Virus record (IMG/VR): IMGVR_UViG_3300032245_001746 | Coordinates: 1 to 64,000 of that record | Length of the DNA: 64,000 nucleotides | Direction: 5' to 3' (one strand) | In this document: positions 29,654 through 45,247 of the stretch, in pieces | Numbering within the stretch: the stretch's first letter is position 1 | How the letters are laid out: each line of letters opens with the position of its first letter | The notes under the pieces: generated by a model | Told to the model about the DNA's origin: nothing | The model's input: only the letters and a program-made list of their open reading frames with translations | The model's database searches: none | Translations under genes and position numbers: made by a program

Positions 29654-29678
29654 AAATTGCTTTCATTAAAATTAAGAG

Positions 29679-30043
29679 TGGATACGGCGAGAGTTGAACT
29701 CGCGTCTAACATAAAATAACTGAAAAAATACTACATGTTTATTCAATTTTTAATTTAATTAAAATTTAATTAATTGACAAAATAAAATTTTAACGATCAA
29801 ATTTAAAATAAACTTGAAAATTTCAACTAATCTTAACTTAAATCTCGTTGAATAATTTAAGTGCAATCAAATTTTACGAAAGATTTTTTGACGCTATTGA
29901 TTTCGCTTCTCAAATCTTGACTGACTAAGCAGCCAAACGAACAGTTTCGCCATTTACGGCTTGATCAATTTTTAAGTAGCCATTGATCAACTACTACATG
30001 CGTTTTGCAATTAATATTATGATATCGAATGCCCAACGTACCC
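29679..30043 (-). ncRNA. ssrA: tmRNA (365 nt), tag peptide (A)GETVRLAA
   Basis: 5' GGGTACG pairs with 3' CGTATCC-A (G3-U wobble); T-arm GCGAG-TTCAACT-CTCGC; PK1-like GTAG/CTAC and TTGATCAA pairing; tag ORF 29951-29925 ending GCT GCT TAG. Confidence 0.93.
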
Positions 30044-32784: not shown

Positions 32785-33057
32785 TTATTTATGTTTAATT
32801 AATTTGTTTAATTTGATATTTTCATCAAAATAAATAGTAATTGATCCTTTATATTTAGTCTCATATGGAGCACCTTCAAAACGCTCTAGATGAACTACAT
32901 TATCAAATTCATCTGTAATATAAAAACCATAAAACAAAAAACTTGAATAAAAAACAAATTTATTTTTTCCAAATTTCAATTTATTACAAAAACTATATGG
33001 ATTATTAATATCAGAATAAAGATTAATTTTATAATTTTGGTTCATGAAAATGGACAC
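32785..33057 (-). CDS. Hypothetical protein
   Basis: 90-aa ORF. Confidence 0.5.
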   Translation of the reverse strand: MSIFMNQNYKINLYSDINNPYSFCNKLKFGKNKFVFYSSFLFYGFYITDEFDNVVHLERFEGAPYETKYKGSITIYFDENIKLNKLIKHK

Positions 33058-35666
33058 TCCTCTGTTGATCCATTTTTTATAATATCAATATTTGCACTAA
33101 GTTTTTTAATTGGATCTGAAGAAAATCTAATTTTCATAGATTTACCACCACGTGCAGGACTTAAAAATCTAGAAAACAATAAATCATGTTTTATAGGATC
33201 AACATCAATTAAACCTAAAGCATAAGCTACTAAACTACCTCCAATAGAATTATGTACTAAAAAACTACTAGTTAAATAATTATGATTATCCTCTATTTCT
33301 AGATCATAAACAAATTTTGGACCTTTAATCTCTTTAATAGATTTAATTCTCAACATCAAACCATCTTTTGTTGATCTCCACACATATTTTTTATTACAAT
33401 TTTTTGAACATCCTATTCTAACATCTAATGGACAATATAGAACATATGATGGAGAAATATTTTTATAATCTTCTCTCAAATCTGTTCTTGTATATTTTTT
33501 AATAGAACATGGCAAACCTATTCTTAATAATAAAAATCTAATTTGCTCTGCTAGTTTATATGAAACAGTTTCAAATTTTGCTTTACCCTCATCTTCATAG
33601 CCATCTGCTAAAAAATATCCACGTAAATATGATTCCACAATGGATACGGGTGCATTTAATATGCAATCAGGAACATATTTACTGTGAGATGTATGTTCAT
33701 ATTCTGGATGTAGTTCGTCAAACAATTTCCTCAAATAAGGAGAGGAAAAAATTGTTTGTATTAAACTTTTATTTTTAGATAAATATTCTTTACAATTAAA
33801 ATTGTAATTTTTCATTAATGAACAAACTTCATTTATGTGTTTTCTAATTAGAGAATTATCACAAAATCCAACCTTTAAAGATCCATCAGAATTAGTCCAA
33901 CCATCACCAACAAAAACTCCCAATATAAATGCCCAATCTTCATTAAGACTCCAAATTCTATTATTTTTTATAGAAGTTTTTCCACCTTTGGAATTAAAAG
34001 TACTTACAACAAAGTTATCATCAAATGATAATTCGCTACCATTTTTAGATTTTCCTTTTGAAAATTTTGATAAATCCACCGTGTAATTTTCAACAACCTC
34101 TACTTTAGGAAAAGGCACAAAACACCAATCTCCAACAGACAATTCCTGTGCTTGAAACCAATCCAAATCTTGAGTAGGTTCTATCCAACATTTTCTAGAT
34201 TTTTTTGTAGAGTCAGACCATTTATCCCAATTTTTGGGTCTTTTTGATTTTTCAGCATATATTTTATGGTCTAAAGTTAACGTAACGCCAACTTCATCTC
34301 CATAATATGTCCTGATTTTTCTAACATTTTCATTAAATGGATACTTCATTGTTTTTAAAACTTTTTTAACAGTTCCATCAACAGTCCATATTTTATCACC
34401 AACTTTAATATTTTTTAATATATTTGTACTTCCATTTTTTAAACGAATTGGAGTATTATGTTTCAAACAGCCCCTGCCTGGTCCGACAGCCTCTGAGCCA
34501 TCGCCCCATCCTAATATTAGTGGAGAAACTCTTCTAGCTTCATCAGTAATCATTTTTTGAACTAAAAAGTAAGAACAAAAACCTTTTTCTTTAATCAACT
34601 CATATTCTTCTTTAATTCTATTGAAGTACTGTTTAGTTTTTGGTATTTTTTTAAATTCAAAACCTTGTTTTATTGCATCTAACAACTTCTGATCATCGTT
34701 TTCAAATGATGGAAATTTAATTGTTCTATCTATTTGAAATTCAACGCCTTTTGCCAATTCACAAATTTTAACAGTATTTTGTTTTGCTTGTTTAAAGATA
34801 TCATAATCCATTACGTCTTGATAATCAGACAACCATTTTTCATTTATTTCTTCTTCAGATTTCATCCAAAGATTTTGATCTTGTATTTCAAATACATCTC
34901 CATCTTCAACAAGTTTTTGTTCAACTTGTTTCATTGTTTTACCCATTTGCATCATCATCATGATAGACTGCATTTTCATATCTTCTTTAAGACAGACGTG
35001 ACAATCATTTGTAATGATAAGTGGTAAACCATATCTTTCTGCTGCTTTCATAATAAAAACATCATATGGTTTTTGTTTTTTAAAATCCAACAACATCATT
35101 TCCAAATAAAATTTATCGTGAAACATATTTTTGTATATTTCAACCATTTTAAATCCAGCTTCTTCGCCACCTTTATCGAAAGCTTGTCCTATTTCGCTAT
35201 TATAGCAACATGATGTAAATATAATTCCTTCTTTGTGTTCTACCAATTGTTGTCTATTAACTCTCGGTTTATAATAAAATCCTTTTTTATATCCAAGAGT
35301 AGATAATTTTACTAAATTTGAATAACCTGTAACGTTGTAAGCAATACCTAATAAATGATATGATTTTTTAAAAAATGGTTTTTGATCTTCAGACATATCT
35401 TTATAAAACAAAGAACTTTCACCATGTTTTAATTCTGTTTGAAGCGGATTAACATATAATTCACAAGCAAAAATTGGACTAATTTTATTATCTTCACATG
35501 TTTTAATTTGTCTTGGGACTGCACCCATAACACCATGATCTGAAATAGTTAAAAATTTTTGATTAATTTGCTTTGCTCTTGCTGCATATTCGTCTGGCAA
35601 GCCATAACCATCAAGAAGACTAAAATGACTATGTAAATGTAAATGTTCAAAACCAGTTATTTCCAC
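33042..35666 (-). CDS. dnaE: DNA polymerase III alpha, N-terminal PHP + partial palm subunit of split DnaE (intein-containing)
   Basis: HLHSHFSLLDG, SDHG, KPR, NDCH; GPGRG/S, GSLVAYALG, LLFSRFLSPAR; ends before PDID. Confidence 0.93.
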   Translation of the reverse strand: MEITGFEHLHLHSHFSLLDGYGLPDEYAARAKQINQKFLTISDHGVMGAVPRQIKTCEDNKISPIFACELYVNPLQTELKHGESSLFYKDMSEDQKPFFKKSYHLLGIAYNVTGYSNLVKLSTLGYKKGFYYKPRVNRQQLVEHKEGIIFTSCCYNSEIGQAFDKGGEEAGFKMVEIYKNMFHDKFYLEMMLLDFKKQKPYDVFIMKAAERYGLPLIITNDCHVCLKEDMKMQSIMMMMQMGKTMKQVEQKLVEDGDVFEIQDQNLWMKSEEEINEKWLSDYQDVMDYDIFKQAKQNTVKICELAKGVEFQIDRTIKFPSFENDDQKLLDAIKQGFEFKKIPKTKQYFNRIKEEYELIKEKGFCSYFLVQKMITDEARRVSPLILGWGDGSEAVGPGRGCLKHNTPIRLKNGSTNILKNIKVGDKIWTVDGTVKKVLKTMKYPFNENVRKIRTYYGDEVGVTLTLDHKIYAEKSKRPKNWDKWSDSTKKSRKCWIEPTQDLDWFQAQELSVGDWCFVPFPKVEVVENYTVDLSKFSKGKSKNGSELSFDDNFVVSTFNSKGGKTSIKNNRIWSLNEDWAFILGVFVGDGWTNSDGSLKVGFCDNSLIRKHINEVCSLMKNYNFNCKEYLSKNKSLIQTIFSSPYLRKLFDELHPEYEHTSHSKYVPDCILNAPVSIVESYLRGYFLADGYEDEGKAKFETVSYKLAEQIRFLLLRIGLPCSIKKYTRTDLREDYKNISPSYVLYCPLDVRIGCSKNCNKKYVWRSTKDGLMLRIKSIKEIKGPKFVYDLEIEDNHNYLTSSFLVHNSIGGSLVAYALGLIDVDPIKHDLLFSRFLSPARGGKSMKIRFSSDPIKKLSANIDIIKNGSTEECPFS
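33249..34469 (-). mobile_element. LAGLIDADG intein in DnaE-N (407 aa)
   Basis: GRG|CLKH...TLDH...VYDLEI...VHN|S; GVFVGDG and RGYFLADG. Confidence 0.92.
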
Positions 35667-35685: not shown

Positions 35686-35874
35686 TCATTTAACAGAATT
35701 AAATTCTACCGTCAAATCCTTCGCCTTTGAATCTAGTTCTTCAAGTTCTTTTTTCAAATTTTTCATATATTCTTGTGCTTCTTCTTGTTTTTGTTTTTTA
35801 ATTAAAAATATTTCTTCAATTTTTTTAGAATAAACCAAAAACTCATTTGACAAAACTTTATTAATATCTAACAT
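35686..35874 (-). CDS. Small coiled-coil protein
   Basis: 62-aa ORF between clpP and dnaE-N. Confidence 0.55.
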   Translation of the reverse strand: MLDINKVLSNEFLVYSKKIEEIFLIKKQKQEEAQEYMKNLKKELEELDSKAKDLTVEFNSVK

Positions 35875-35883
35875 AAAAACCTT

Positions 35884-36579
35884 TCATAAATCAATATTGT
35901 ATTTTTCTACAGCCATAACTTCTTCAAAAGTATTATAATTATCGACTCCAAGTATAGCATCACACAATCCATATTCTTGAGCATCTTGTGATGTCATGTA
36001 CCAATCTGATTTTTCTCTAAGTTTTCGATCAAAGAAAGATTTAATCTTTCCTTCTGACATCTTTCTGTCAACAAAATATTGACCAACCTTAGCTCGTTTA
36101 GCAAAAATTTCAATCATTCTTTTTTTCAAACATTCAACGGAATGATCAATTGATGATTTAGCAGCAGTTATAGAACCATAATGACCAGCATTTCCATAAT
36201 GCATCATAAATTCACAATCTTTCATCATAACTCTATAATCTGCTGATTGCAAAATCACACCACTCATAGAACTAGCTTGCGCATAAGATATTATTGTAAT
36301 AGGACATTTACAAAATCTGATTGAATTAAAAATTGCCATTCCATCAGCCCAATTGCCGCCTATTGAATGCATATGAACAAGAATAGGATTTGAATTTTGT
36401 CTTGATAAAATATTAAGATTTTTAATAAATGAAGTTGCCATCTTGTATTCAACACCAGCTTCATTTATTCCTTCTTCATATTCCAAACTATGAAGATAAA
36501 TTTCTCTGTTGTGGTAATTAATACCATATTGATGAATATCACTAACTAATTGAGCCAATTCTGTTCTTCTTCTTGACAT
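35884..36579 (-). CDS. clpP: ClpP-like serine protease
   Basis: MHSIGG, ASSMS (Ser), MMH (His), DWYMT..DA.EYGLCD (Asp). Confidence 0.88.
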   Translation of the reverse strand: MSRRRTELAQLVSDIHQYGINYHNREIYLHSLEYEEGINEAGVEYKMATSFIKNLNILSRQNSNPILVHMHSIGGNWADGMAIFNSIRFCKCPITIISYAQASSMSGVILQSADYRVMMKDCEFMMHYGNAGHYGSITAAKSSIDHSVECLKKRMIEIFAKRAKVGQYFVDRKMSEGKIKSFFDRKLREKSDWYMTSQDAQEYGLCDAILGVDNYNTFEEVMAVEKYNIDL

Positions 36580-36617
36580 AAAATTGCTACCTTTTTAATG
36601 ATATTTATCATTACAAA

Positions 36618-36788
36618 TTACAATAATTCAGCTTTTTTAATAGAAAAATCAACTACTTCTGAATCTTCATACTCTTTTTTTAAAATTATACCTAATTCAG
36701 ATAAAATAAAGGCTAATCTTTCTAAGGATTCAAAAATATCTTCATCTTTAAAAATAGTAATTTTTTTAATTTCTTTCATTTTCATCAT
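36618..36788 (-). CDS. Small hypothetical protein (56 aa, missed by ORF track)
   Basis: MMKMKEIKKITIFKDEDIFESLERLAFILSELGIILKKEYEDSEVVDFSIKKAELL fills the spoVR-clpP gap. Confidence 0.5.
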   Translation of the reverse strand: MMKMKEIKKITIFKDEDIFESLERLAFILSELGIILKKEYEDSEVVDFSIKKAELL

Positions 36789-38367
36789 ATTGCTCTCTAG
36801 TTAATAACTCAACAGATCCATCTTCAGAACCAAAACAAACATAAATTAACTCTTCACCAGATTTATTTTTAGTGGACAAATATACATTGTTTTTCCAAAA
36901 ATAATATAGAGATTGTAAAACTGGTTCTAAATAAGATTCATACAATTCTCGACCATCAAACTTGTGTTCTAAATAAAGATAACCTTTACCTTTATAATTT
37001 GGATCAACCAATTCAATTTCAGGAAGTCCTCCATTCATATATTTTAACATCAAACCTTTTTTAATATCCAAAAAATTTCTATCTTCTAATTTAACATCTC
37101 CATTTGGCTGTCTTTTCCAATTAAAAAATTCATGTTTTTCACAAAATTCAGGAGTGAAATATTTTAATATCGCTATAAAATCATTAGTTTCTTTTCTAAC
37201 TTCAAATATTTTTTCCTTACCTAAATTAAGATTTAAATCCCAATTTAATTTTTTATTTAAATCCGTACAATTTTCGTATTCAGGACCGAATCTGCCTTTA
37301 TTCCATCGTTCTTCTATATCTAGAAACAAACTAAATCCAAGTTTATAAGGATTAGTAGAATATTTTCCTCCCAATACGCCCATTTTATGTTTAGCGTATT
37401 CTATAATTGAATTTTTATTTTCTCCATGACCTAATGCTGCCAGACCTTCTTTGCACATTATGTGATAATCAATATATGAAGCCCATCCTTCATTCATCAT
37501 TTTAGTCGAACGTTGTGGAGCAAAATAAATACTTTCTTGATATAACATTGCAATAATATCTTGTTGCCAAGGTTTTAATGGAGCATTATCTCTTATAAAT
37601 GGCATTACATCTTTAGTAGGACTATCAAATATTTCTAATTCTTTAGCTAATTCTTCGCGATGAATTTCTTCATTTTGTTTATCAATCCAAGTTTTGTTGT
37701 TGATATAAGGTTCCATGTAATCATGTGTCTCATCTACATGAAGTCTTTTTGGATGTTTCCATTTTCTAACATCTTTAACAATATGTTCTTTTATAACCTT
37801 ACTGCTCCATGCTTTAGATGGATCAATTAATGTTGCAATTCTCAAACAATGATCTATAAACTCTGTTACTTTTTCTCTACCCCATCTTGAAGAATATTTT
37901 CTTATCCTTGTTCCATGATTAGCCAATTGATTAATCATATTCAATGAGGTTTTTTCAAAAAATACATTATTTTTGAAAAAATCATTATGACCTAAAGCAT
38001 GTGCAATAACTGTTACGTTATCTAAAATGGTATTAGAATTTAAACAATAAAGATAGCAAGGTGATGTGTTAATTACCATTTCATAAATTCTGTGAGCACC
38101 GTATTCATATCCCCTTTGCAATTCCTCATATTCCATTCCCCATTGCCAATGAGGATATCTAACTGGAAATCCACCATATGCCGCTACTTCTGATATTTCA
38201 TCATAACTAAGCATTTGAATAACAGTTGGATAAAAATCCAATCCAAAATCTTTACATTTTTGAAAAATAGTTGGAATCAATTTTTTTAAATCATCTGGTA
38301 TTTGAACTCCAGGAGTAGTGGAATCTCCTGGAAGCATTGATAGACCATGAAAAAATTTACTTGACAT
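36766..38367 (-). CDS. spoVR: SpoVR/YcgB family protein
   Basis: GFPVRYPHW, IYEMVIN, AHALGHNDFFKNN, YFAPQRSTKMMNEGWAS, NPYKLG. Confidence 0.95.
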   Translation of the reverse strand: MSSKFFHGLSMLPGDSTTPGVQIPDDLKKLIPTIFQKCKDFGLDFYPTVIQMLSYDEISEVAAYGGFPVRYPHWQWGMEYEELQRGYEYGAHRIYEMVINTSPCYLYCLNSNTILDNVTVIAHALGHNDFFKNNVFFEKTSLNMINQLANHGTRIRKYSSRWGREKVTEFIDHCLRIATLIDPSKAWSSKVIKEHIVKDVRKWKHPKRLHVDETHDYMEPYINNKTWIDKQNEEIHREELAKELEIFDSPTKDVMPFIRDNAPLKPWQQDIIAMLYQESIYFAPQRSTKMMNEGWASYIDYHIMCKEGLAALGHGENKNSIIEYAKHKMGVLGGKYSTNPYKLGFSLFLDIEERWNKGRFGPEYENCTDLNKKLNWDLNLNLGKEKIFEVRKETNDFIAILKYFTPEFCEKHEFFNWKRQPNGDVKLEDRNFLDIKKGLMLKYMNGGLPEIELVDPNYKGKGYLYLEHKFDGRELYESYLEPVLQSLYYFWKNNVYLSTKNKSGEELIYVCFGSEDGSVELLTREQYDENERN

Positions 38368-38392
38368 TATATTTATTTCCTTTTTATTTATA

Positions 38393-39595
38393 TTAAAGAG
38401 ACCCAACGCCGAAAGGTTTAGATGGACTATTATTAGCACCAAGTAAATCTAAAATTGCATTTTTGACCTGCTTGTCTCTTTCCTCTTGAGAAAGAGTATT
38501 ATACCAATTATTGGATTCTCCAACTGCGGTTGTTTTTATATTTTTTGTACCTTTAAGGTTAGTATCAACATATTCTTTTAACGAATTGTTATACGCAGAC
38601 ATGATCTGTGTGATACCAATAAAATTAACTACATTATCAGGAAAACTTTCTTTTATAACCTTTACAAATTCAGAATTATCATTGAAATCATTTTCTCCAT
38701 CTGTAAAATAAAATATATAAAAATTCCACTTATTAATTGGAAATCTAGTTTCTAATTGAGATGATATTAATTTTAAAGCACTTGAACAAATTGTTCCACC
38801 ACCATATCGATATTTATAAAATTTATTTTCATCAACCTCTGATGCTACTGTATCATGCCAAACATAACAACGCTCAACACGTTCATAAAACCTTTTAATC
38901 CATATGTCAATCCACCAAGCAATATCAGAAACTATATCGCATTTATATTGATCCATAGATCCAGATCCATCTCTTGCAAAAAACACAACAGCATTAGATG
39001 AAGGTTTTTTAATTACCTTATACTGTCTGTATCTTTTGTCTTGATTAATTGGAGTAATCATTTTAACAGGAACGGAAAAACCTGGAGGCGTCCAAAGTTT
39101 ATTAATATCTCCTGTCGCAGATTGTCTTTTCATAGCTTGCATCATTGTTCTGCGATTATGTCTTAATGATTCTGGACCTAATAAAGATATACTGTTATAT
39201 TTTATTTTTTCTTCTTGTAAGACATCATTTTGTCTAGGTTTTAATGGAGGAAGTCGCAATTCATTTTCCATAAATTGTAGAACTTCTTCTAAATCCAAAT
39301 TAATTTCTACACCTTCACCTTCCTCTTGACCAGCTTGACCTGCTCCTTGACCTTGTTTAGGACCTTTCTTTAAAATATCACCATCTTTTCCTTGACCTCT
39401 TCCAACACCTTTATTGTTATCACCATATACAATATGTGGAATATCCATTTTAGGAATAGTAATAGGAACTCTTTTACCATTTGGTCGAGTTCTAAAAATA
39501 GTGCCATTATTAACAAATTTCTTTAAAGCTTTTCTTATTTTACCACTATAAACATCTCTAAAATGTTTATGATCTTCTTCTATTCTATTTGGCAT
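38393..39595 (-). CDS. yeaH: YeaH/YhbH (DUF444) vWA-domain protein
   Basis: G-rich linker, DGSGSM MIDAS, GGGTICSSA, TDGEN. Confidence 0.92.
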   Translation of the reverse strand: MPNRIEEDHKHFRDVYSGKIRKALKKFVNNGTIFRTRPNGKRVPITIPKMDIPHIVYGDNNKGVGRGQGKDGDILKKGPKQGQGAGQAGQEEGEGVEINLDLEEVLQFMENELRLPPLKPRQNDVLQEEKIKYNSISLLGPESLRHNRRTMMQAMKRQSATGDINKLWTPPGFSVPVKMITPINQDKRYRQYKVIKKPSSNAVVFFARDGSGSMDQYKCDIVSDIAWWIDIWIKRFYERVERCYVWHDTVASEVDENKFYKYRYGGGTICSSALKLISSQLETRFPINKWNFYIFYFTDGENDFNDNSEFVKVIKESFPDNVVNFIGITQIMSAYNNSLKEYVDTNLKGTKNIKTTAVGESNNWYNTLSQEERDKQVKNAILDLLGANNSPSKPFGVGSL

Positions 39596-39627
39596 TAAAA
39601 TTTTTCCTTAAACAAAAATATTAAGAA

Positions 39628-39661
39628 AAATAGCCATAACAATTAATTGTTATGGCTATTT
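39628..39661 (-). terminator. Perfect 34-bp palindrome between prkA and yeaH
   Basis: AAATAGCCATAACAATT/AATTGTTATGGCTATTT with T-run on minus strand. Confidence 0.7.
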
Positions 39662-39685
39662 AGCATTATCAAAAACACTTAACAA

Positions 39686-41773
39686 TTAATCTTCAACAGA
39701 ATCGCCACGAGCGAACAAAGAACTAACATAATTTAAAACATCTTCTGCCGATTTATCGTTATAACCAAAATTTTTAATTAATCTTTGCTTAATAGCATCA
39801 ATTTTTTCTTGTATTGTTGGATCAACCACAGTAGCACCACTAGAATTTAAAGCACTCAATTTAATGTGATCTTTAGTATCCTCAAACAATTTAGCCTCTA
39901 AAGCTTTTTTCAATTCTGGGTCTGAATCCCATTTAAATTCAAGTCCTTTAACCTTCTGTGCTCCAATGAATGTAGCAACACTTCTTCTGTAATCATCTGC
40001 ACCTGTTTCTGGAACATTTATCTTTTCCTCAATAGACCTCATTAATTTTTCATCTGGTTCTTGTTCACGTCCTGTATAAGGATTAACTATTTTGGTTTTA
40101 TAAATATAAGCAACAACGTTATCAATATAATTGGTACATAATCTAACAATTGCTTCTTCATCTCCAACAAGTGCTTTTTGAACTTCATTTTTCAAAATAT
40201 CACTTAATTCTTTAAGAGCCAATTCAGCACATGTTATGTAATTAGAAACATCTTCTTTATTAAGAAGAGCAGAATTACTCAATCCTTCTTTAATTTCATT
40301 AAGAACCATGAATGGATTAATATAATCATGATGACTACTTAGACAATTTGATATTTTATCTTGAGCAAATCTAACAGATACTCCCTTATCCATTCCTTCA
40401 CCTTCATATTTATCTCTTAGTTCCTTAACTCTATCTTCAGTGTAACCTGGAAGGAATTTGCCATCATAAAGTTTAACTTTATCAACAAGACTTAAATTTG
40501 GTTCTTTTCCATCTTTAAGTCTTGTTAAAATTAACCAAAATGCAACAATTTCTATTGTGTGAGGGGCAATGTGTTGATTTACTTTGTTTGGAGCATAATC
40601 CTGCATTAACACCTTGATTTCATCACTTAATTTCAAAAGATACGGAACGTCAATTTTAACAGTTCTGTCTCTCAAAGCTTCCATTGTTTGATCGTCTTTA
40701 AGTTTCTTAAACTCTGGCATATTTGAATGTCCAATTATCGCTTCATCAATAGAAACTTGAGAAAACTTTTTAGGCTTTATACTTCTTTCTTGAGAAGCAC
40801 CAAGTAAATCGTACAAAAATGCTTTATCTAATTTAAGCATTTCAATAAATTCACAAAATCCTCTATTTGCTACACAAAACTCTCCATCAAAATTAAACGC
40901 TCTAGGATCTGAGTCTACTCCAAAATGAGGCAACTTACTATAATTGATATCTCCAGTTAATTCAGTAGCATCTTGATTTTTTTCATCTTTTGGTTGAAAA
41001 GTTGCGATTCCAACACGATCAGCTTCAGAGTGAACTTTTCTTATAACCTTTATATGAGTATCAATTACTTTCTTCCAATCACCAGAATATCTCTTTAATA
41101 GCTCAGACATAAATTTTTTACATCTTGGATTCAACTCTCCATCAACACGAATAGGATAAACTGCACTTTTGTTAATTCCATTTTTAACAGATTGTTCTAC
41201 GAAAATAGAATTAATTCTTGAAAGAACATTATGTCTCATTTCTAATGGTATAAGTTTTATTGGATCATCATTCATAGGACACTCATCTTCTTCAGATGTA
41301 TAAAGATCTGAAGGGAGATTGACCCATTTATAAGTGTACCAAGCACCATCTTCTGTTCTTGAATATTCTTCCAAACCTTTCTTTAATAATCTGCATATTG
41401 TTGATTTAGAAGAACCTACTGGTCCGTGTAGGAGTAATATTCTTTTTTCTGTACCGTGACATCCAGCCGCACCGCGAATAAATTTAACAATAGCATCTAA
41501 CGTTTCATCTAAACCAAAAATTGGAATATTAGGATCATCAAAAAAGTTATAATGAGTATAAGTTTTACGATAAATCTTTATAGGCTTTGTTCCTTTTGAC
41601 AAAATCATATCGTATAATCTTTGATACGCTGTTCTACATAGACGTGGATTTTGCTCAACTTTTTGCAAATATTCATCAAAACTAATTATTTCATTATAAG
41701 ATAAATATTTATTTCTATCAAACAAACTTGACAACCAATTTAAATCAATCGTTTTTTCATCTATTTCTGACAT
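39686..41773 (-). CDS. prkA: PrkA/YeaG AAA+ protein
   Basis: LLHGPVGSSKS, KDEKNQD, SDPRAFNFDGE, ANRG..EFIE, EALRDR. Confidence 0.96.
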   Translation of the reverse strand: MSEIDEKTIDLNWLSSLFDRNKYLSYNEIISFDEYLQKVEQNPRLCRTAYQRLYDMILSKGTKPIKIYRKTYTHYNFFDDPNIPIFGLDETLDAIVKFIRGAAGCHGTEKRILLLHGPVGSSKSTICRLLKKGLEEYSRTEDGAWYTYKWVNLPSDLYTSEEDECPMNDDPIKLIPLEMRHNVLSRINSIFVEQSVKNGINKSAVYPIRVDGELNPRCKKFMSELLKRYSGDWKKVIDTHIKVIRKVHSEADRVGIATFQPKDEKNQDATELTGDINYSKLPHFGVDSDPRAFNFDGEFCVANRGFCEFIEMLKLDKAFLYDLLGASQERSIKPKKFSQVSIDEAIIGHSNMPEFKKLKDDQTMEALRDRTVKIDVPYLLKLSDEIKVLMQDYAPNKVNQHIAPHTIEIVAFWLILTRLKDGKEPNLSLVDKVKLYDGKFLPGYTEDRVKELRDKYEGEGMDKGVSVRFAQDKISNCLSSHHDYINPFMVLNEIKEGLSNSALLNKEDVSNYITCAELALKELSDILKNEVQKALVGDEEAIVRLCTNYIDNVVAYIYKTKIVNPYTGREQEPDEKLMRSIEEKINVPETGADDYRRSVATFIGAQKVKGLEFKWDSDPELKKALEAKLFEDTKDHIKLSALNSSGATVVDPTIQEKIDAIKQRLIKNFGYNDKSAEDVLNYVSSLFARGDSVED

Positions 41774-41842: not shown

Positions 41843-41877
41843 AAAAAAAAGAGAAGATTTTATTCTTCTCTTTTTTT
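41843..41877. terminator. Intrinsic terminator (possibly bidirectional)
   Basis: aaaaaaaagagaag-attttatt-cttctcttttttt. Confidence 0.75.
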
Positions 41878-42211
41878 ATTTTACTTCTCCAAAATATTTA
41901 CCACTAGAAATATCATCCATTTCTTTGTAAGCTTTTTTACCTTTTAACAACTTTTCACCTTCTTCTCTTTGTTTTTTTACATTTTTTAAATTAGATTTAA
42001 ATCTATAATCATGTCCATTAGACTCACTAACCCATTTATCAGTTCCAACAGGCTGATTAAATTTATAAGAAGTAGAAGATATTAATTTTTCCTTCTTTTT
42101 AGAATTACATTTTGGACAAACAACATCTTTATATTTATCTGTTGGATCATATTTTACAAAATCTGTATATATTTCTTCACATTCTTTACATTTAAAATCA
42201 AAATTTGGCAC
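41876..42211 (-). CDS. FmdB-family zinc-ribbon protein
   Basis: MPNFDFKCKEC...CPKC...KLIS. Confidence 0.85.
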   Translation of the reverse strand: MPNFDFKCKECEEIYTDFVKYDPTDKYKDVVCPKCNSKKKEKLISSTSYKFNQPVGTDKWVSESNGHDYRFKSNLKNVKKQREEGEKLLKGKKAYKEMDDISSGKYFGEVK

Positions 42212-43891: not shown

Positions 43892-45247
43892 CTAAATGAG
43901 ATTTAATTGTTTTAATTTTTCTGTAGTTGATACACATTCTTGAAAATTAAATATAATTACTTCAGCATATTCTTTTCCAACAACATCTTCTGGATGGTAG
44001 TCCCCACCTTTTACTATCTTTTTAGGTTTTATTTTTTTAATTATTTCTAAAGGAGTATCTTCTTCAAACCAAGTAACATAATCAACAAATTCCAAAGAAG
44101 AAACAATCTTCATTCTATCTTCTAATGAATAAATAGGTCTTTTTTCACCTTTAAGTCTTTTAACAGAATTATCTGAATTAAGAGCAACAACTAGTTTTTC
44201 ACCTTGTTTTTTTGCAAACTTTAAGCATTCTATATGTGCAGGCGTAAGACCCGCATCGAAACAACCATTTGTGAACACTAAATCGTTTGAATTAAACTCA
44301 AAATCAGAATTAACTATTTTTGCATTGCAATTATCATGATGTTTCTTTAAATCATTCAAATCAATAGCATATCCATTAAGTTTTTGAACATATATACTGC
44401 TGGCAAAGAAGGCTATTTCAATAGATTCTTGAATACTCAAATTTAAAGATTGACATATAGAAATAAATGAAATAAAACAATCTCCAGCACCTACAACACT
44501 TTGAACATTTATCGTGTTTTTTGGAACATATTCTCCATATTCATCATATGTTTTATAATACACTCCCTTACCTTCATTTGTTATAATACATACTTTACAA
44601 TTTGTTTCTTTCATCAAAATGTCACATTGTTTCTTCCAATCCTTTGTGCCTGTCATCAAAATAGCTTCTTTGTAATTAGGTTTAAAAATGGTACAACCAT
44701 ACCATTTAGATGCAGGTCCTAATTTAGGATCAACAATTGTTATAATATCTTCACAATTACTTAATATAGATTTTATATATTCCTCGTCAAATAACCCCTT
44801 ATTATAATCAGATAAAACTAAAACATTTGATTCTTGTTTTAATTCATTAAAATAATCTAATAAAACATTACGAACATCAAAAAGTTGTTCCTCATTTAAT
44901 TTATAATTTTCAAATTCATCATCAATTCTGGCAACTTGATTATTTCCACAATAATATCTACTTTTAACTGGAATTTTTGCATTATAATTTCCATGATGTT
45001 CTTCAACTGAAATAAAATAAGCATTTATGAATCTTTCTATTTGTTCATACACTTTGGCAGCACCACCAGAAGTTTTAATTGGCTTTTTTCCATTTAATTT
45101 AATTATAGGAATTGGACATTCTGGTGAAATCCTAGTCATTTCACATTGATAATGTTCATCAATTATGTTATCTCCAAAAACAATAATTTTGTTATTTTTA
45201 TAGCAATTATATTCCAGTAATTTTATAAATTTTTCAATTATATTCAT
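43892..45247 (-). CDS. hldE: Bifunctional heptose kinase / nucleotidyltransferase (HldE/RfaE)
   Basis: GD.IIDE, RISPE.P.P, SDYNKG, VDPK, KPN, GAGD; TNGCFD, LNSDNSVKRLKG..RP, KGGDY. Confidence 0.9.
   Translation of the reverse strand: MNIIEKFIKLLEYNCYKNNKIIVFGDNIIDEHYQCEMTRISPECPIPIIKLNGKKPIKTSGGAAKVYEQIERFINAYFISVEEHHGNYNAKIPVKSRYYCGNNQVARIDDEFENYKLNEEQLFDVRNVLLDYFNELKQESNVLVLSDYNKGLFDEEYIKSILSNCEDIITIVDPKLGPASKWYGCTIFKPNYKEAILMTGTKDWKKQCDILMKETNCKVCIITNEGKGVYYKTYDEYGEYVPKNTINVQSVVGAGDCFISFISICQSLNLSIQESIEIAFFASSIYVQKLNGYAIDLNDLKKHHDNCNAKIVNSDFEFNSNDLVFTNGCFDAGLTPAHIECLKFAKKQGEKLVVALNSDNSVKRLKGEKRPIYSLEDRMKIVSSLEFVDYVTWFEEDTPLEIIKKIKPKKIVKGGDYHPEDVVGKEYAEVIIFNFQECVSTTEKLKQLNLI

What the first reader, a model, noticed from the sequence alone, without database searches (positions are those of the whole stretch)
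35884..41773. Phage-encoded PrkA(AAA+)-YeaH(vWA)-SpoVR module followed by an intact ClpP
Seen: the complete prkA-yeaH-spoVR triad in order, then a 56-aa ORF and clpP with Ser/His/Asp triad. SpoVR shows HALGH...NEGWAS, a gluzincin-like ligand pattern without the catalytic Glu, and YeaH has a full MIDAS. Known: the triad is a conserved bacterial stress/stationary-phase system of poorly resolved mechanism, resembling AAA+/vWA remodelling systems. Inference: the phage carries its own unfoldase-adaptor-protease pathway, perhaps to infect or manipulate starved or dormant hosts. The ClpP adjacency suggests a possible partner peptidase for PrkA.
Basis: partly seen in the sequence, partly recalled or inferred. 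Interest (0 to 1): 0.8.

Follow-up and report, generated by a model that had tools for sequence, protein, structure and literature searches.

The report
Huge-phage PrkA–YeaH–SpoVR module plus ClpP
A very large T4-like phage carries an intact copy of the bacterial PrkA–YeaH–SpoVR stress module, recently tied to starvation-induced protein breakdown; it is conserved across its whole phage clade, while the neighbouring ClpP-like protease is an optional extra that more probably works with a phage ClpX than with PrkA.

Summary
PrkA (39686-41773), YeaH/DUF444 (38393-39595), SpoVR (36766-38367) and a ClpP-family protease (35884-36579) lie head to tail on the minus strand, with all catalytic and metal-binding motifs intact.

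- **Phage origin.** The 320-kb record has a terminase and a T4-type head module: gp21-like protease, then gp23 capsid protein.
- **Triad.** It was acquired once and is kept in at least 80 related viral contigs. It is at least as conserved as the adjacent DNA polymerase. Inteins sit in two invariant SpoVR motifs.
- **SpoVR fold.** The predicted fold resembles zincin metallopeptidases, but the motif is HxxxH without the catalytic Glu.
- **ClpP.** This is a divergent paralogue, "ClpP-A". It is present in about 40% of clade members, always right after SpoVR, and was lost several times. No ClpP-like gene lies near the triad in six phages of other lineages; among 80 cellular PrkA loci one has a ClpP-like gene within 10 kb, on the opposite strand. 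It is not the head protease. Relatives encode a true ClpX and a tmRNA.

The triad is probably a phage-run proteolysis or remodelling module. A PrkA–ClpP partnership is not supported. Phage triads are already annotated (φYS40, RsoM2USA). The 56-aa ORF is probably not a gene.

The parts
39686..41773 (-). prkA: AAA+ ATPase of the PrkA/YeaG family, 695 aa
   Evidence: PF08298 plus PF06798. phrog_22605. 688 bits to PDB 9xip over the full length. Walker A and other invariant residues are kept. 59-70% identical to 80 viral relatives.
39628..39661 (-). 15-bp hairpin followed by a T-rich tail, between prkA and yeaH; terminator- or attenuator-like
   Evidence: Consensus scan. Its function was not tested.
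38393..39595 (-). yeaH: DUF444 protein with a vWA domain and a complete MIDAS, 400 aa
   Evidence: PF04285. NF003711 at 313 bits. D209, S211, S213, T268 and D299 are invariant.
36766..38367 (-). spoVR (ycgB-like), 533 aa counted from the ATG; predicted zincin-like fold with HxxxH and NEGWA motifs
   Evidence: PF04293 plus PF24755. Invariant H73, E96, N100, H123, H127, E293 and D396. AF2 model with pLDDT 77. VIA-align matches to zincin peptidases with Z up to 10.6.
36618..36788 (-). 56-aa open frame in the spoVR-clpP spacer; probably not a gene
   Evidence: No family hit. No homologue in clade loci. The closest relative has no called gene at this position.
36597..36612 (-). Short palindrome that contains GATAAATA (36602-36609), 22 nt before the clpP ATG
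   Evidence: Read from the sequence. TAAATA lies at -62 to -27 (eight of ten occurrences at -43 to -32) before ClpP-A in 9 of 29 distinct relatives, against 2.2 expected. It was found before prkA in 0 of 75, yeaH in 1 of 73 and spoVR in 1 of 72.
35884..36579 (-). clpP-A: divergent ClpP-family serine protease, 231 aa
   Evidence: PF00574 at 77.8 bits, below the NCBIfam ClpP cut-offs. Ser104, His127 and Asp192 are invariant. More than 335 homologues. All 6 homologues (46-68% identical) whose metagenome contexts were looked up lie right after SpoVR.
35686..35874 (-). Small conserved ORF of 62 aa that precedes dnaE; it travels with dnaE, not with clpP
   Evidence: Its family is also present in loci that lack ClpP: L028, L029 and L030.
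33042..35666 (-). Context: N-terminal part of DNA polymerase III alpha, carrying an intein and a LAGLIDADG endonuclease
   Evidence: PHP, DNA_pol3_alpha, Intein_splicing and LAGLIDADG_3. It is the syntenic neighbour in the clade.
29676..30043 (-). Context: phage tmRNA with tag GETVRLAA
   Evidence: Rfam RF00023 at 76.6 bits. ARAGORN. A full-length tmRNA is present in all five clade genomes searched, a few kb from the triad where positions can be compared, with or without ClpP-A.

Best explanation
The three genes are a working phage copy of the bacterial PrkA/YeaG-YeaH-SpoVR/YcgB module. An ancestor of a clade of T4-like huge phages acquired it once, and the clade has kept it by vertical descent under strong constraint.

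I think it most likely runs an ATP-dependent protein remodelling or degradation process in the infected cell:
- PrkA supplies the AAA+ motor.
- YeaH supplies a vWA/MIDAS adaptor.
- SpoVR supplies a zincin-fold, metal-binding component. It could be a peptidase with an unusual catalytic base, or a non-catalytic substrate-handling part.

By analogy with E. coli YeaG-dependent starvation proteolysis, the phage would use the module to convert host cytoplasmic protein into amino acids and energy during a long infection of nutrient-poor cells. That step is inferred, not shown.

The adjacent ClpP-A gene is a separate, dispensable item. It is an active-looking ClpP paralogue that was ancestral to the clade at this map position and was lost repeatedly. 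It often has its own TAAATA-type box upstream. Its most probable partner is the ClpX that relatives encode, or the host ClpX, alongside the clade's tmRNA. It is neither PrkA's peptidase nor the head protease.
For: Shown here:
- The domains and every tested motif are intact.
- The genome is a phage, with TerL, a gp21-like protease and gp23.
- IMG/VR holds 386 viral stretches that encode PrkA relatives. Of the best 80, 73 have the full triad in the same order.
- The clade's PrkA is monophyletic (SH-aLRT 99) and sister to cellular PrkA at 51-56% identity.
- Identity to relatives is 59-70% for PrkA, 47-69% for YeaH and mostly 54-68% for SpoVR. It is 45-65% for DnaE, 37-51% for ClpP and 34-51% for the Zn-ribbon ORF.
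- Inteins sit at N100|T101 and A296|S297 of SpoVR in relatives, and inside NEG|A in an unrelated huge phage.
- The SpoVR model matches M30, M1, M3, M9, M32, M2, M4 and MATCAP peptidases. The language-model search gave its nearest non-SpoVR families as Aminopep and MATCAP.
- ClpP-A is present in 27 of 67 covered loci and changed state at least 5 times. Its tree broadly follows PrkA's, with branches 2-3 times longer.
- ClpX, with its zinc finger, AAA_2 and D2-small domains, is present in relatives LR756511.1 and G003. A full-length tmRNA is present in all five clade genomes searched.
- Wastewater metatranscriptome contigs cover parts of all four genes.

From the literature:
- YeaG is required for starvation-induced bulk proteolysis (PMC13684143).
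- B. subtilis PrkA degrades casein with ATP (PMC9512850).
- yeaG, yeaH and ycgB show conserved cofitness in six bacteria (bioRxiv 10.1101/072470).
- Phage G encodes an adjacent ClpP-ClpX pair besides its head protease (PMC12484599).
Against: - No experiment bears on any phage copy.
- B. anthracis PrkA showed negligible protease and kinase activity in vitro (PMC13001217).
- SpoVR lacks the Glu of HExxH, and one subfamily has HxxxxH spacing.
- Foldseek found no significant PDB match. hhalign against a MATCAP alignment gave nothing. The Z scores of 8-10 for a largely helical model are within the range that the tool's notes say can reflect only a common arrangement.
- ClpX was not found in the window's own 320-kb fragment, which is 63% complete.
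- ClpP-A keeps its place next to SpoVR wherever it occurs, so a functional tie to the triad is not excluded.
- RNA-library contigs may come from carried-over DNA.
- The host and the timing of expression are unknown.
Confidence: 0.45

Rival explanations
1. ClpP-A is the peptidase chamber for PrkA, so the four genes form one unfoldase-adaptor-protease machine.
For: - ClpP-A always lies directly after SpoVR on the same strand, within 500 nt in 22 of 27 loci. The same holds in 6 of 6 metagenome contexts looked up, at 46-68% identity.
- No ClpX-type or classical AAA gene was found in the window's own 320 kb.
- One RNA-library contig bridges the SpoVR/ClpP junction.
Against: - ClpP-A is absent from 40 of 67 covered clade loci that keep the triad, including the complete 595-kb genome LR756511.1.
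- It changed state at least 5 times on the PrkA tree.
- No ClpP-like gene lies near the triad in the Thermus phages, RsoM2USA or three other huge phages. Among 80 cellular PrkA loci, one has a ClpP-like gene within 10 kb, on the opposite strand.
- ClpX exists in the clade.
- The spoVR-dnaE slot holds varied unrelated cargo in other members.
- A TAAATA box is enriched before ClpP-A but not before the triad genes.
- ClpP-A evolves 2-3 times faster than PrkA.
Confidence: 0.12
2. ClpP-A is a late head-maturation (prohead) protease.
For: - The best PHROG hits are 'head maturation protease' families.
- The closest homologues outside the clade (39-45% identical) sit immediately upstream of a terminase, minor capsid and major head gene module.
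- A T4-late-promoter-like TAAATA box lies upstream in a third of relatives.
Against: - G000 and its relatives have a gp21-type prohead protease (PF03420, 92 bits), followed by a 308-aa ORF and then the gp23 capsid gene.
- ClpP-A is missing from a complete relative genome and from most clade members.
- It scores below the NCBIfam head-protease cut-off (59 against 120).
- It has no scaffold or capsid-targeting extension.
- It lies among replication genes.
Confidence: 0.07
3. The triad acts as a signalling or regulatory device rather than a degradation machine. In this view it is kinase-like, or controls sporulation or the stress response, and re-programmes the host's stationary-phase or dormancy state.
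For: - PrkA/YeaG was first described as a Ser kinase. Mutant phenotypes are regulatory and vary between species (bioRxiv 10.1101/072470; PMC4605624 summarises the sporulation roles).
- B. anthracis PrkA has no clear enzymatic activity, yet it affects sporulation and osmotic tolerance (PMC13001217).
Against: - Kinase activity was not confirmed for B. subtilis PrkA (PMC9512850).
- The E. coli phenotype is bulk proteolysis (PMC13684143).
- The nearest cellular PrkA relatives come from non-sporulating phyla.
- SpoVR has a peptidase-type fold.
Confidence: 0.2
4. The contig is cellular or a mis-called provirus, so the module is simply the host's own.
For: IMG/VR labels three relatives as 'provirus'. 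One relative is filed in GenBank inside an archaeal MAG.
Against: - The same record carries TerL, a gp21-like protease and gp23.
- The closest database genome is a 595-kb phage.
- Synteny is conserved over hundreds of kb among viral contigs.
- The clade's PrkA is separated from all sampled cellular PrkA.
Confidence: 0.02

Closest known systems
Bacterial prkA-yeaH-spoVR operon (E. coli yeaG-yeaH plus ycgB; B. subtilis prkA-yhbH and spoVR)
   Same: Same three families in the same order, and the same invariant motifs. The nearest cellular PrkA proteins (Myxococcota, Planctomycetota and others) are 51-56% identical. 38 of the 80 closest cellular loci show the same prkA-yeaH-spoVR order.
   Different: It is encoded by a lytic-type huge phage. 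It forms its own clade. In some members, inteins or homing-endonuclease-like inserts lie in or between the genes. A ClpP paralogue follows it in about 40% of members.
Triads already annotated in cultured phages: Thermus phages φYS40, TMA, MN1 and Lalka, and Ralstonia jumbo phage RsoM2USA
   Same: PrkA, a DUF444 protein and SpoVR are clustered in a phage genome. PHROG families exist for all three.
   Different: They share only 24-30% PrkA identity and are separate lineages on the tree. The Thermus phages have the order yeaH-spoVR-prkA. None has a ClpP-like gene nearby. None has been studied functionally in the papers I could search.
Phage G ClpP-ClpX pair, and bacterial ClpXP with tmRNA
   Same: A huge phage that encodes ClpP in addition to a dedicated head protease (PMC12484599). 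This clade also has ClpX and a tmRNA whose tag ends in LAA.
   Different: Here ClpP-A is not next to ClpX. ClpX was not found in the window's own fragment. ClpP-A is far from canonical ClpP. A second paralogue, type B, exists in relatives.
AAA+ proteases with a zincin domain (FtsH) and MoxR-vWA remodelling systems
   Same: An AAA+ ATPase, a vWA/MIDAS protein and a zincin-fold protein are combined.
   Different: The three parts are separate polypeptides. SpoVR lacks the HExxH glutamate. No assembly or activity has been shown. This is a resemblance, not membership.

Membership tests
PrkA/YeaG AAA+ family | N-terminal PrkA-type AAA domain (PF08298) plus the C-terminal PrkA domain (PF06798), above the Pfam cut-offs | tested here: met
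   269 and 235 bits against a cut-off of 25. Full-length match to PDB 9xip.
PrkA/YeaG AAA+ family | Walker A P-loop and the other invariant ATPase residues | tested here: met
   G117, P118, G120, K123 and S124, and also N303, G305, E308, E311, D369, R370, R418 and R468, are invariant.
PrkA/YeaG AAA+ family | NCBIfam equivalog score for enterobacterial YeaG (NF011999) | tested here: not met
   194 bits against a cut-off of 576. It belongs to the long PrkA subfamily of about 690 aa, not to the YeaG equivalog.
YeaH/YhbH (DUF444, vWA) | PF04285 above its cut-off, and a complete MIDAS (DxSxS...T...D) | tested here: met
   215 bits. D209, S211, S213, T268 and D299 are invariant.
SpoVR/YcgB | PF04293 plus the SpoVR_C domain | tested here: met
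   358 bits and 29.8 bits.
prkA-yeaH-spoVR functional module | The three genes are co-located in one orientation | tested here: met
   73 of 80 clade loci have the full triad.
prkA-yeaH-spoVR functional module | ATP-dependent proteolysis, or a role in starvation-induced protein degradation | not testable with these tools
   Known only for E. coli YeaG (PMC13684143) and B. subtilis PrkA (PMC9512850). It is disputed for B. anthracis PrkA (PMC13001217).
Canonical ClpP (peptidase S14) | Clp_protease domain and the Ser-His-Asp triad | tested here: met
   PF00574 at 77.8 bits. S104, H127 and D192 are invariant in 120 homologues.
Canonical ClpP (peptidase S14) | NCBIfam/TIGRFAM ClpP trusted scores | tested here: not met
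   NF001368 at 66 against 249. TIGR00493 at 52 against 308.6.
Canonical ClpP (peptidase S14) | Tetradecamer assembly and docking of an AAA+ partner | not testable with these tools
   The region that aligns to the ClpP handle has the usual length. No complex prediction was available.
ClpP-related phage head-maturation protease | NF045542 score; position in the head module; the only prohead protease of the phage | tested here: not met
   59 against 120. It lies between spoVR and dnaE. A gp21-type protease is present in the head module near gp23.
Zincin (gluzincin) metallopeptidases, for SpoVR | HExxH motif with the catalytic Glu | tested here: not met
   The motif is H-[A/V]-x-G-H, and HxxxxH in one subfamily.
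Zincin (gluzincin) metallopeptidases, for SpoVR | A downstream Glu as third ligand, and the zincin fold | tested here: inconclusive
   E293 is invariant. Nearly all of the 50 VIA-align matches listed are zincins, with Z of 6-10.6. Foldseek found no significant match, and hhalign against MATCAP was negative.

The most novel reading that the evidence does not exclude
PrkA, YeaH and SpoVR together form a three-part ATP-dependent metalloprotease: an AAA+ motor, a MIDAS adaptor and a zincin-fold SpoVR that uses a non-canonical catalytic base. A large clade of huge phages deploys its own copy to liquidate the host proteome for phage production. In members that keep it, ClpP-A extends this degradation capacity.
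Probability: 0.22. Interest if true: 0.8.

Novelty: new member of a known kind. Interest (0 to 1): 0.5.

Why it matters
The biochemical mechanism of the YeaG/PrkA-YeaH-YcgB/SpoVR system is unresolved. A 2026 paper makes YeaG the key factor of starvation-induced bulk proteolysis without naming a peptidase.

Three results from this work make SpoVR a concrete candidate to test:
- The predicted SpoVR fold is zincin-like.
- Three motifs are invariant.
- Inteins target two of those motifs.

The module has been kept for a long time in a whole clade of huge phages, and it is at least as conserved as their DNA polymerase. This suggests that phages exploit the pathway, which would be a new kind of host take-over: recycling host protein in the way nucleases recycle host DNA.

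The finding as written overstates the role of ClpP.

Tried and rejected
- **Near-identical DNA in the phage collection:** none found.
- **PADLOC defence models:** no hit on any of the seven proteins scanned.
- **ClpP as head protease:** rejected after finding the module of gp21-like protease, a 308-aa ORF and gp23. PF04586 was absent.
- **tmRNA as a correlate of ClpP-A:** rejected. A full-length tmRNA is present in all five genomes searched, whatever their ClpP-A status.
- **GATAAATA as a proven late promoter:** not established.
  - In the AT-rich G000, TAAATA is no commoner upstream of genes than on the antisense strand (40 against 33 of 201).
  - In the 56%-GC relative G004, many hits are a TAAATAGG...ATG junction motif, and its ClpP lacks the box.
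  - Only the enrichment across relatives stands.
- **Sequence-profile link of SpoVR to zincins:** hhalign against seven MATCAP homologues gave probability 0.04. The PDB sequence search with the SpoVR profile and with YeaH gave nothing. Foldseek against the PDB found no significant hit.
- **RNA contigs:** they show presence only, with no strand or transcript ends.
- I did not predict a ClpP-A structure or any complexes. I did not read residue-level alignments of SpoVR to zincin templates, because the tool does not give them.
Full report
**1. What is there**

The window is the first 64 kb of a 319,857-base IMG/VR virus record (CheckV completeness 63%). It has about 27% G+C, and most genes are on the minus strand. 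These open frames follow each other on that strand:
- a Zn-ribbon ORF (41876-42211)
- prkA (39686-41773)
- yeaH (38393-39595)
- spoVR (36766-38367/38442)
- a 56-aa frame (36618-36788)
- a ClpP-like gene (35884-36579)
- a 62-aa ORF (35686-35874)
- the N-terminal part of DNA polymerase III alpha, with an intein (33042-35666)

Pfam, PHROGs and NCBIfam confirm the family assignments.

- PrkA has Walker A G117-P-V-G-S-S-K123-S124.
- YeaH has the MIDAS residues D209, S211, S213, T268 and D299.
- SpoVR has H123-A-L-G-H127 and N292-E-G-W-A-S297, counted from the ATG at 38367.
- ClpP has Ser104, His127 and Asp192, invariant in 120 homologues.

The 56-aa frame is not conserved, and the closest relative has no called gene at that position. 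I regard it as spacer.

**2. It is a phage**

The same record holds several virion genes:
- a large terminase at about 198-200 kb
- a T4 gp21-type prohead protease at 191545-192264 (PF03420, 92 bits)
- a T4 gp23-type major capsid protein at 189137-190582 (PF07068, 296 bits)

The prohead protease and the capsid gene are separated by a 308-aa ORF.

The closest deposited genome is the 595-kb uncultured phage LR756511.1, with 64% PrkA identity. Near-identical DNA occurs in wastewater, river and activated-sludge metagenomes.

**3. The triad in phages**

Phage copies are already annotated in several cultured phages:
- Thermus phages φYS40, TMA, YS40_Isch, phiLo, MN1 and Lalka
- Ralstonia jumbo phage RsoM2USA

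PHROG families exist for all three proteins. Papers that contain these gene names together with phage terms only list the genes.

The extent and conservation in this clade appear to be new:
- IMG/VR holds 386 stretches that encode PrkA relatives. The best 80 are 59-70% identical to the window's PrkA, and 73 of them show the complete triad in the same order.
- On a PrkA tree the clade is monophyletic (SH-aLRT 99). It is sister to, not nested within, the sampled cellular proteins, which come from Planctomycetota, Myxococcota, Chloroflexota, Acidobacteriota and other phyla and are 51-56% identical. Thermus-phage, Ralstonia-phage and other huge-phage copies are far away. This fits one old acquisition followed by vertical descent.
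- The clade spans at least 27% to 56% G+C with the same gene order.
- Across relatives, PrkA is 59-70% identical, YeaH 47-69% and SpoVR mostly 54-68%. These are at least as conserved as DnaE (45-65%) and more conserved than the neighbouring Zn-ribbon ORF (34-51%) and the HldE-like gene (33-49%).
- SpoVR carries inteins with LAGLIDADG endonucleases in several relatives, at two sites. One lies between N100 and T101, inside the invariant E96-x-V-x-N100 motif. The other lies between A296 and S297, directly after N292-E-G-W-A296.
- An unrelated huge phage, LR756504.1, has a third intein inside the same NEG/A motif. Inteins typically occupy the most constrained sites of important proteins, so this marks these motifs as functionally central.

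**4. SpoVR fold**

- An AlphaFold2 model built on 25 sequences has mean pLDDT 77 and pTM 0.73.
- Foldseek against the PDB found nothing significant.
- The Foldseek-independent VIA-align search gave Z of 10.6 down to about 6. Nearly all of the 50 listed matches are zincin metallopeptidases. They include M30 lugdulysin, M1 aminopeptidases and LTA4 hydrolase, M3, M9 collagenases, M32, ACE, thermolysin, LasB, DPP III, M61 and MATCAP. Two YbeY metal-dependent hydrolases are also listed.
- The protein language-model search gave Aminopep (PF10023) and MATCAP as the nearest named non-SpoVR families, at low scores.
- Against this, hhalign with a MATCAP alignment was negative. The Glu of HExxH is Ala or Val. 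One subfamily has HxxxxH spacing. Z values of this size can arise from a common helical arrangement, as the tool's notes warn.

I conclude that a zincin-like fold is likely and that catalytic competence is open. E96, which is invariant, is a candidate alternative base; this is inference only.

**5. The ClpP-like gene**

It is a divergent ClpP-family protein, here called ClpP-A. It passes Pfam but not the NCBIfam ClpP models or the head-protease model. More than 335 homologues exist, many on contigs of 200-580 kb.

Position and distribution:
- All six homologues whose context I looked up (46-68% identical) lie directly after SpoVR and before DnaE.
- Within the clade, ClpP-A is present in 27 of 67 loci where the region is covered, always downstream of SpoVR on the same strand.
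- 40 loci lack it, including the complete genome LR756511.1, which has no ClpP-A anywhere.
- On the PrkA tree its presence needs at least 5 changes. ClpP-A is monophyletic, its tree broadly follows PrkA's, and its branches are 2-3 times longer. The simplest reading is an ancestral gene with several losses.
- In other members, the same spoVR-dnaE slot holds unrelated cargo. This includes unknown ORFs and, a few genes further on, a small AAA protein next to DnaE parts.
- Outside the clade, no ClpP-like gene lies within 7-10 kb of the triad in six phages of other lineages.
- Among the 80 closest cellular PrkA loci, only one has a ClpP-like gene within 10 kb, on the opposite strand.

Other ClpP-related genes:
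- The nearest ClpP-A relatives outside the clade (39-45% identical) sit immediately upstream of a terminase, minor capsid and major head gene module in smaller phages. The family probably began as a head-module protease.
- In this clade that role is taken by the gp21-like enzyme.
- Relatives carry a second, more distant ClpP paralogue, type B, beside a histidine phosphatase and RNA-repair-type genes.
- Two relatives carry a genuine ClpX with its zinc finger, AAA_2 and D2-small domains.
- A full-length tmRNA was found in all five clade genomes searched. The window's copy (29676-30043) has the tag GETVRLAA.
- The window's own fragment shows no ClpX or classical AAA gene, but it is only 63% complete.

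Upstream box: TAAATA lies at -62 to -27 before ClpP-A (eight of ten occurrences at -43 to -32) in 9 of 29 distinct relatives, against 2.2 expected. It was found before prkA in 0 of 75, yeaH in 1 of 73 and spoVR in 1 of 72. The window's GATAAATA at 36602-36609 is one instance. This suggests separate transcription of ClpP-A. Whether the box is a late promoter could not be established.

Hairpins: strong hairpins flank prkA at 41844-41877 and 39628-39661.

RNA evidence: contigs from three wastewater metatranscriptomes cover parts of all four genes at 95-100% identity. One contig spans the SpoVR/ClpP junction. They carry no strand information, and DNA carry-over cannot be excluded.

**6. Mechanism**

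Shown:
- The phage clade keeps intact genes under strong constraint, in one conserved unit.
- ClpP-A is dispensable for the triad.

From the literature:
- The three bacterial genes act together, with conserved cofitness in six bacteria (bioRxiv 10.1101/072470).
- E. coli YeaG is needed for starvation-induced, largely non-specific degradation of cytoplasmic protein, which feeds new synthesis (PMC13684143).
- B. subtilis PrkA degrades casein with ATP (PMC9512850).
- B. anthracis PrkA does not do so measurably (PMC13001217).

Inferred:
- The phage runs this process itself, to turn host protein into building blocks and energy during a long infection of nutrient-limited cells. PrkA would be the motor, YeaH the adaptor and SpoVR the metal-dependent component.
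- ClpP-A more probably belongs with the clade's ClpX and tmRNA protein-quality set. This resembles the adjacent ClpP-ClpX pair of phage G, which also has a separate head protease (PMC12484599).

**7. Verdict**

The module is real and surely functional. The ClpP partnership is not supported, and the head-protease alternative is not supported either.
- The triad is a new member of a known kind, because phage copies were already annotated.
- The added value lies in four points: the clade-wide conservation, the single origin, the inteins in SpoVR, and the zincin-like fold. Together they give a testable candidate for the missing peptidase of the YeaG pathway.

Noticed in passing
window 29676-30043 (-): Phage-encoded tmRNA (Rfam 76.6 bits) with tag GETVRLAA. 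A full-length tmRNA was found in all five clade genomes searched, a few kb from the triad where positions can be compared.
   Followed up: partly
L024:11796-14711, L028:9526-12417, L029:11295-14219, L044:11252-13855; L077 (LR756504.1): Inteins with LAGLIDADG endonucleases inside SpoVR at three sites. One lies after N100. Two lie in or after the NEGWA motif, in two unrelated phage lineages. The ESM Atlas also has clusters of SpoVR combined with LAGLIDADG.
   Followed up: partly
window 33042-35666 (-): The N-terminal part of DNA polymerase III alpha carries an intein with a LAGLIDADG endonuclease. The closest relative, L247, has the same architecture.
   Followed up: no
G000:261000-318000 (outside the window), minus strand: About 70 copies of a conserved AAGTTTGATTGTACAAT box, spaced 150-3000 nt apart, many 40-60 nt upstream of an ATG in a region of small ORFs (positions 261-318 kb; 9 contexts read). 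It looks like a phage-specific, possibly early, promoter array. The box does not occur near the triad.
   Followed up: partly
L275 (LR756511.1:193.1-194.5 kb), L276 (G003:1.7-2.9 kb): Bona fide ClpX genes in clade relatives, with the zinc finger, AAA_2 and D2-small domains. In LR756511.1 the ClpX gene is next to an M50-type peptidase gene.
   Followed up: partly
L060:9546-10157, L062:9691-10317, L055: A second ClpP paralogue, type B (about 205 aa, 23-27% identical to ClpP-A), in relatives. It lies beside a histidine phosphatase, a polyA/CCA-type nucleotidyltransferase and an RNA-repair HAD gene. It is absent at the syntenic site of G000.
   Followed up: partly
L070/L071 (GCA_003352295.1, QQVH01000006.1): A 546-kb contig filed in GenBank under a 'Crenarchaeota archaeon' MAG carries this phage clade's syntenic region. 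It is probably a mis-binned huge phage. IMG/VR labels three 300-340-kb relatives as 'provirus', which may likewise be an artefact.
   Followed up: no
G004 (L256-L273) compared with G000: Members of one clade, with 68% identical PrkA and conserved gene order, differ from 27% to 56% G+C.
   Followed up: no
G004, many gene junctions: A recurrent TAAATAGG-N3-ATG/GTG motif at gene starts. It may be a stop codon and ribosome-binding junction rather than a promoter.
   Followed up: no
PDB 9xip, 9xiq, 9xir: A solved structure of a 692-aa 'Serine protein kinase' is a full-length PrkA homologue (688 bits). I found no paper on it in the library.
   Followed up: no
window 43892-45247 (-): An HldE-like bifunctional sugar kinase and nucleotidyltransferase (PfkB plus CTP_transf_like domains), conserved upstream of the triad across the clade.
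   Followed up: no
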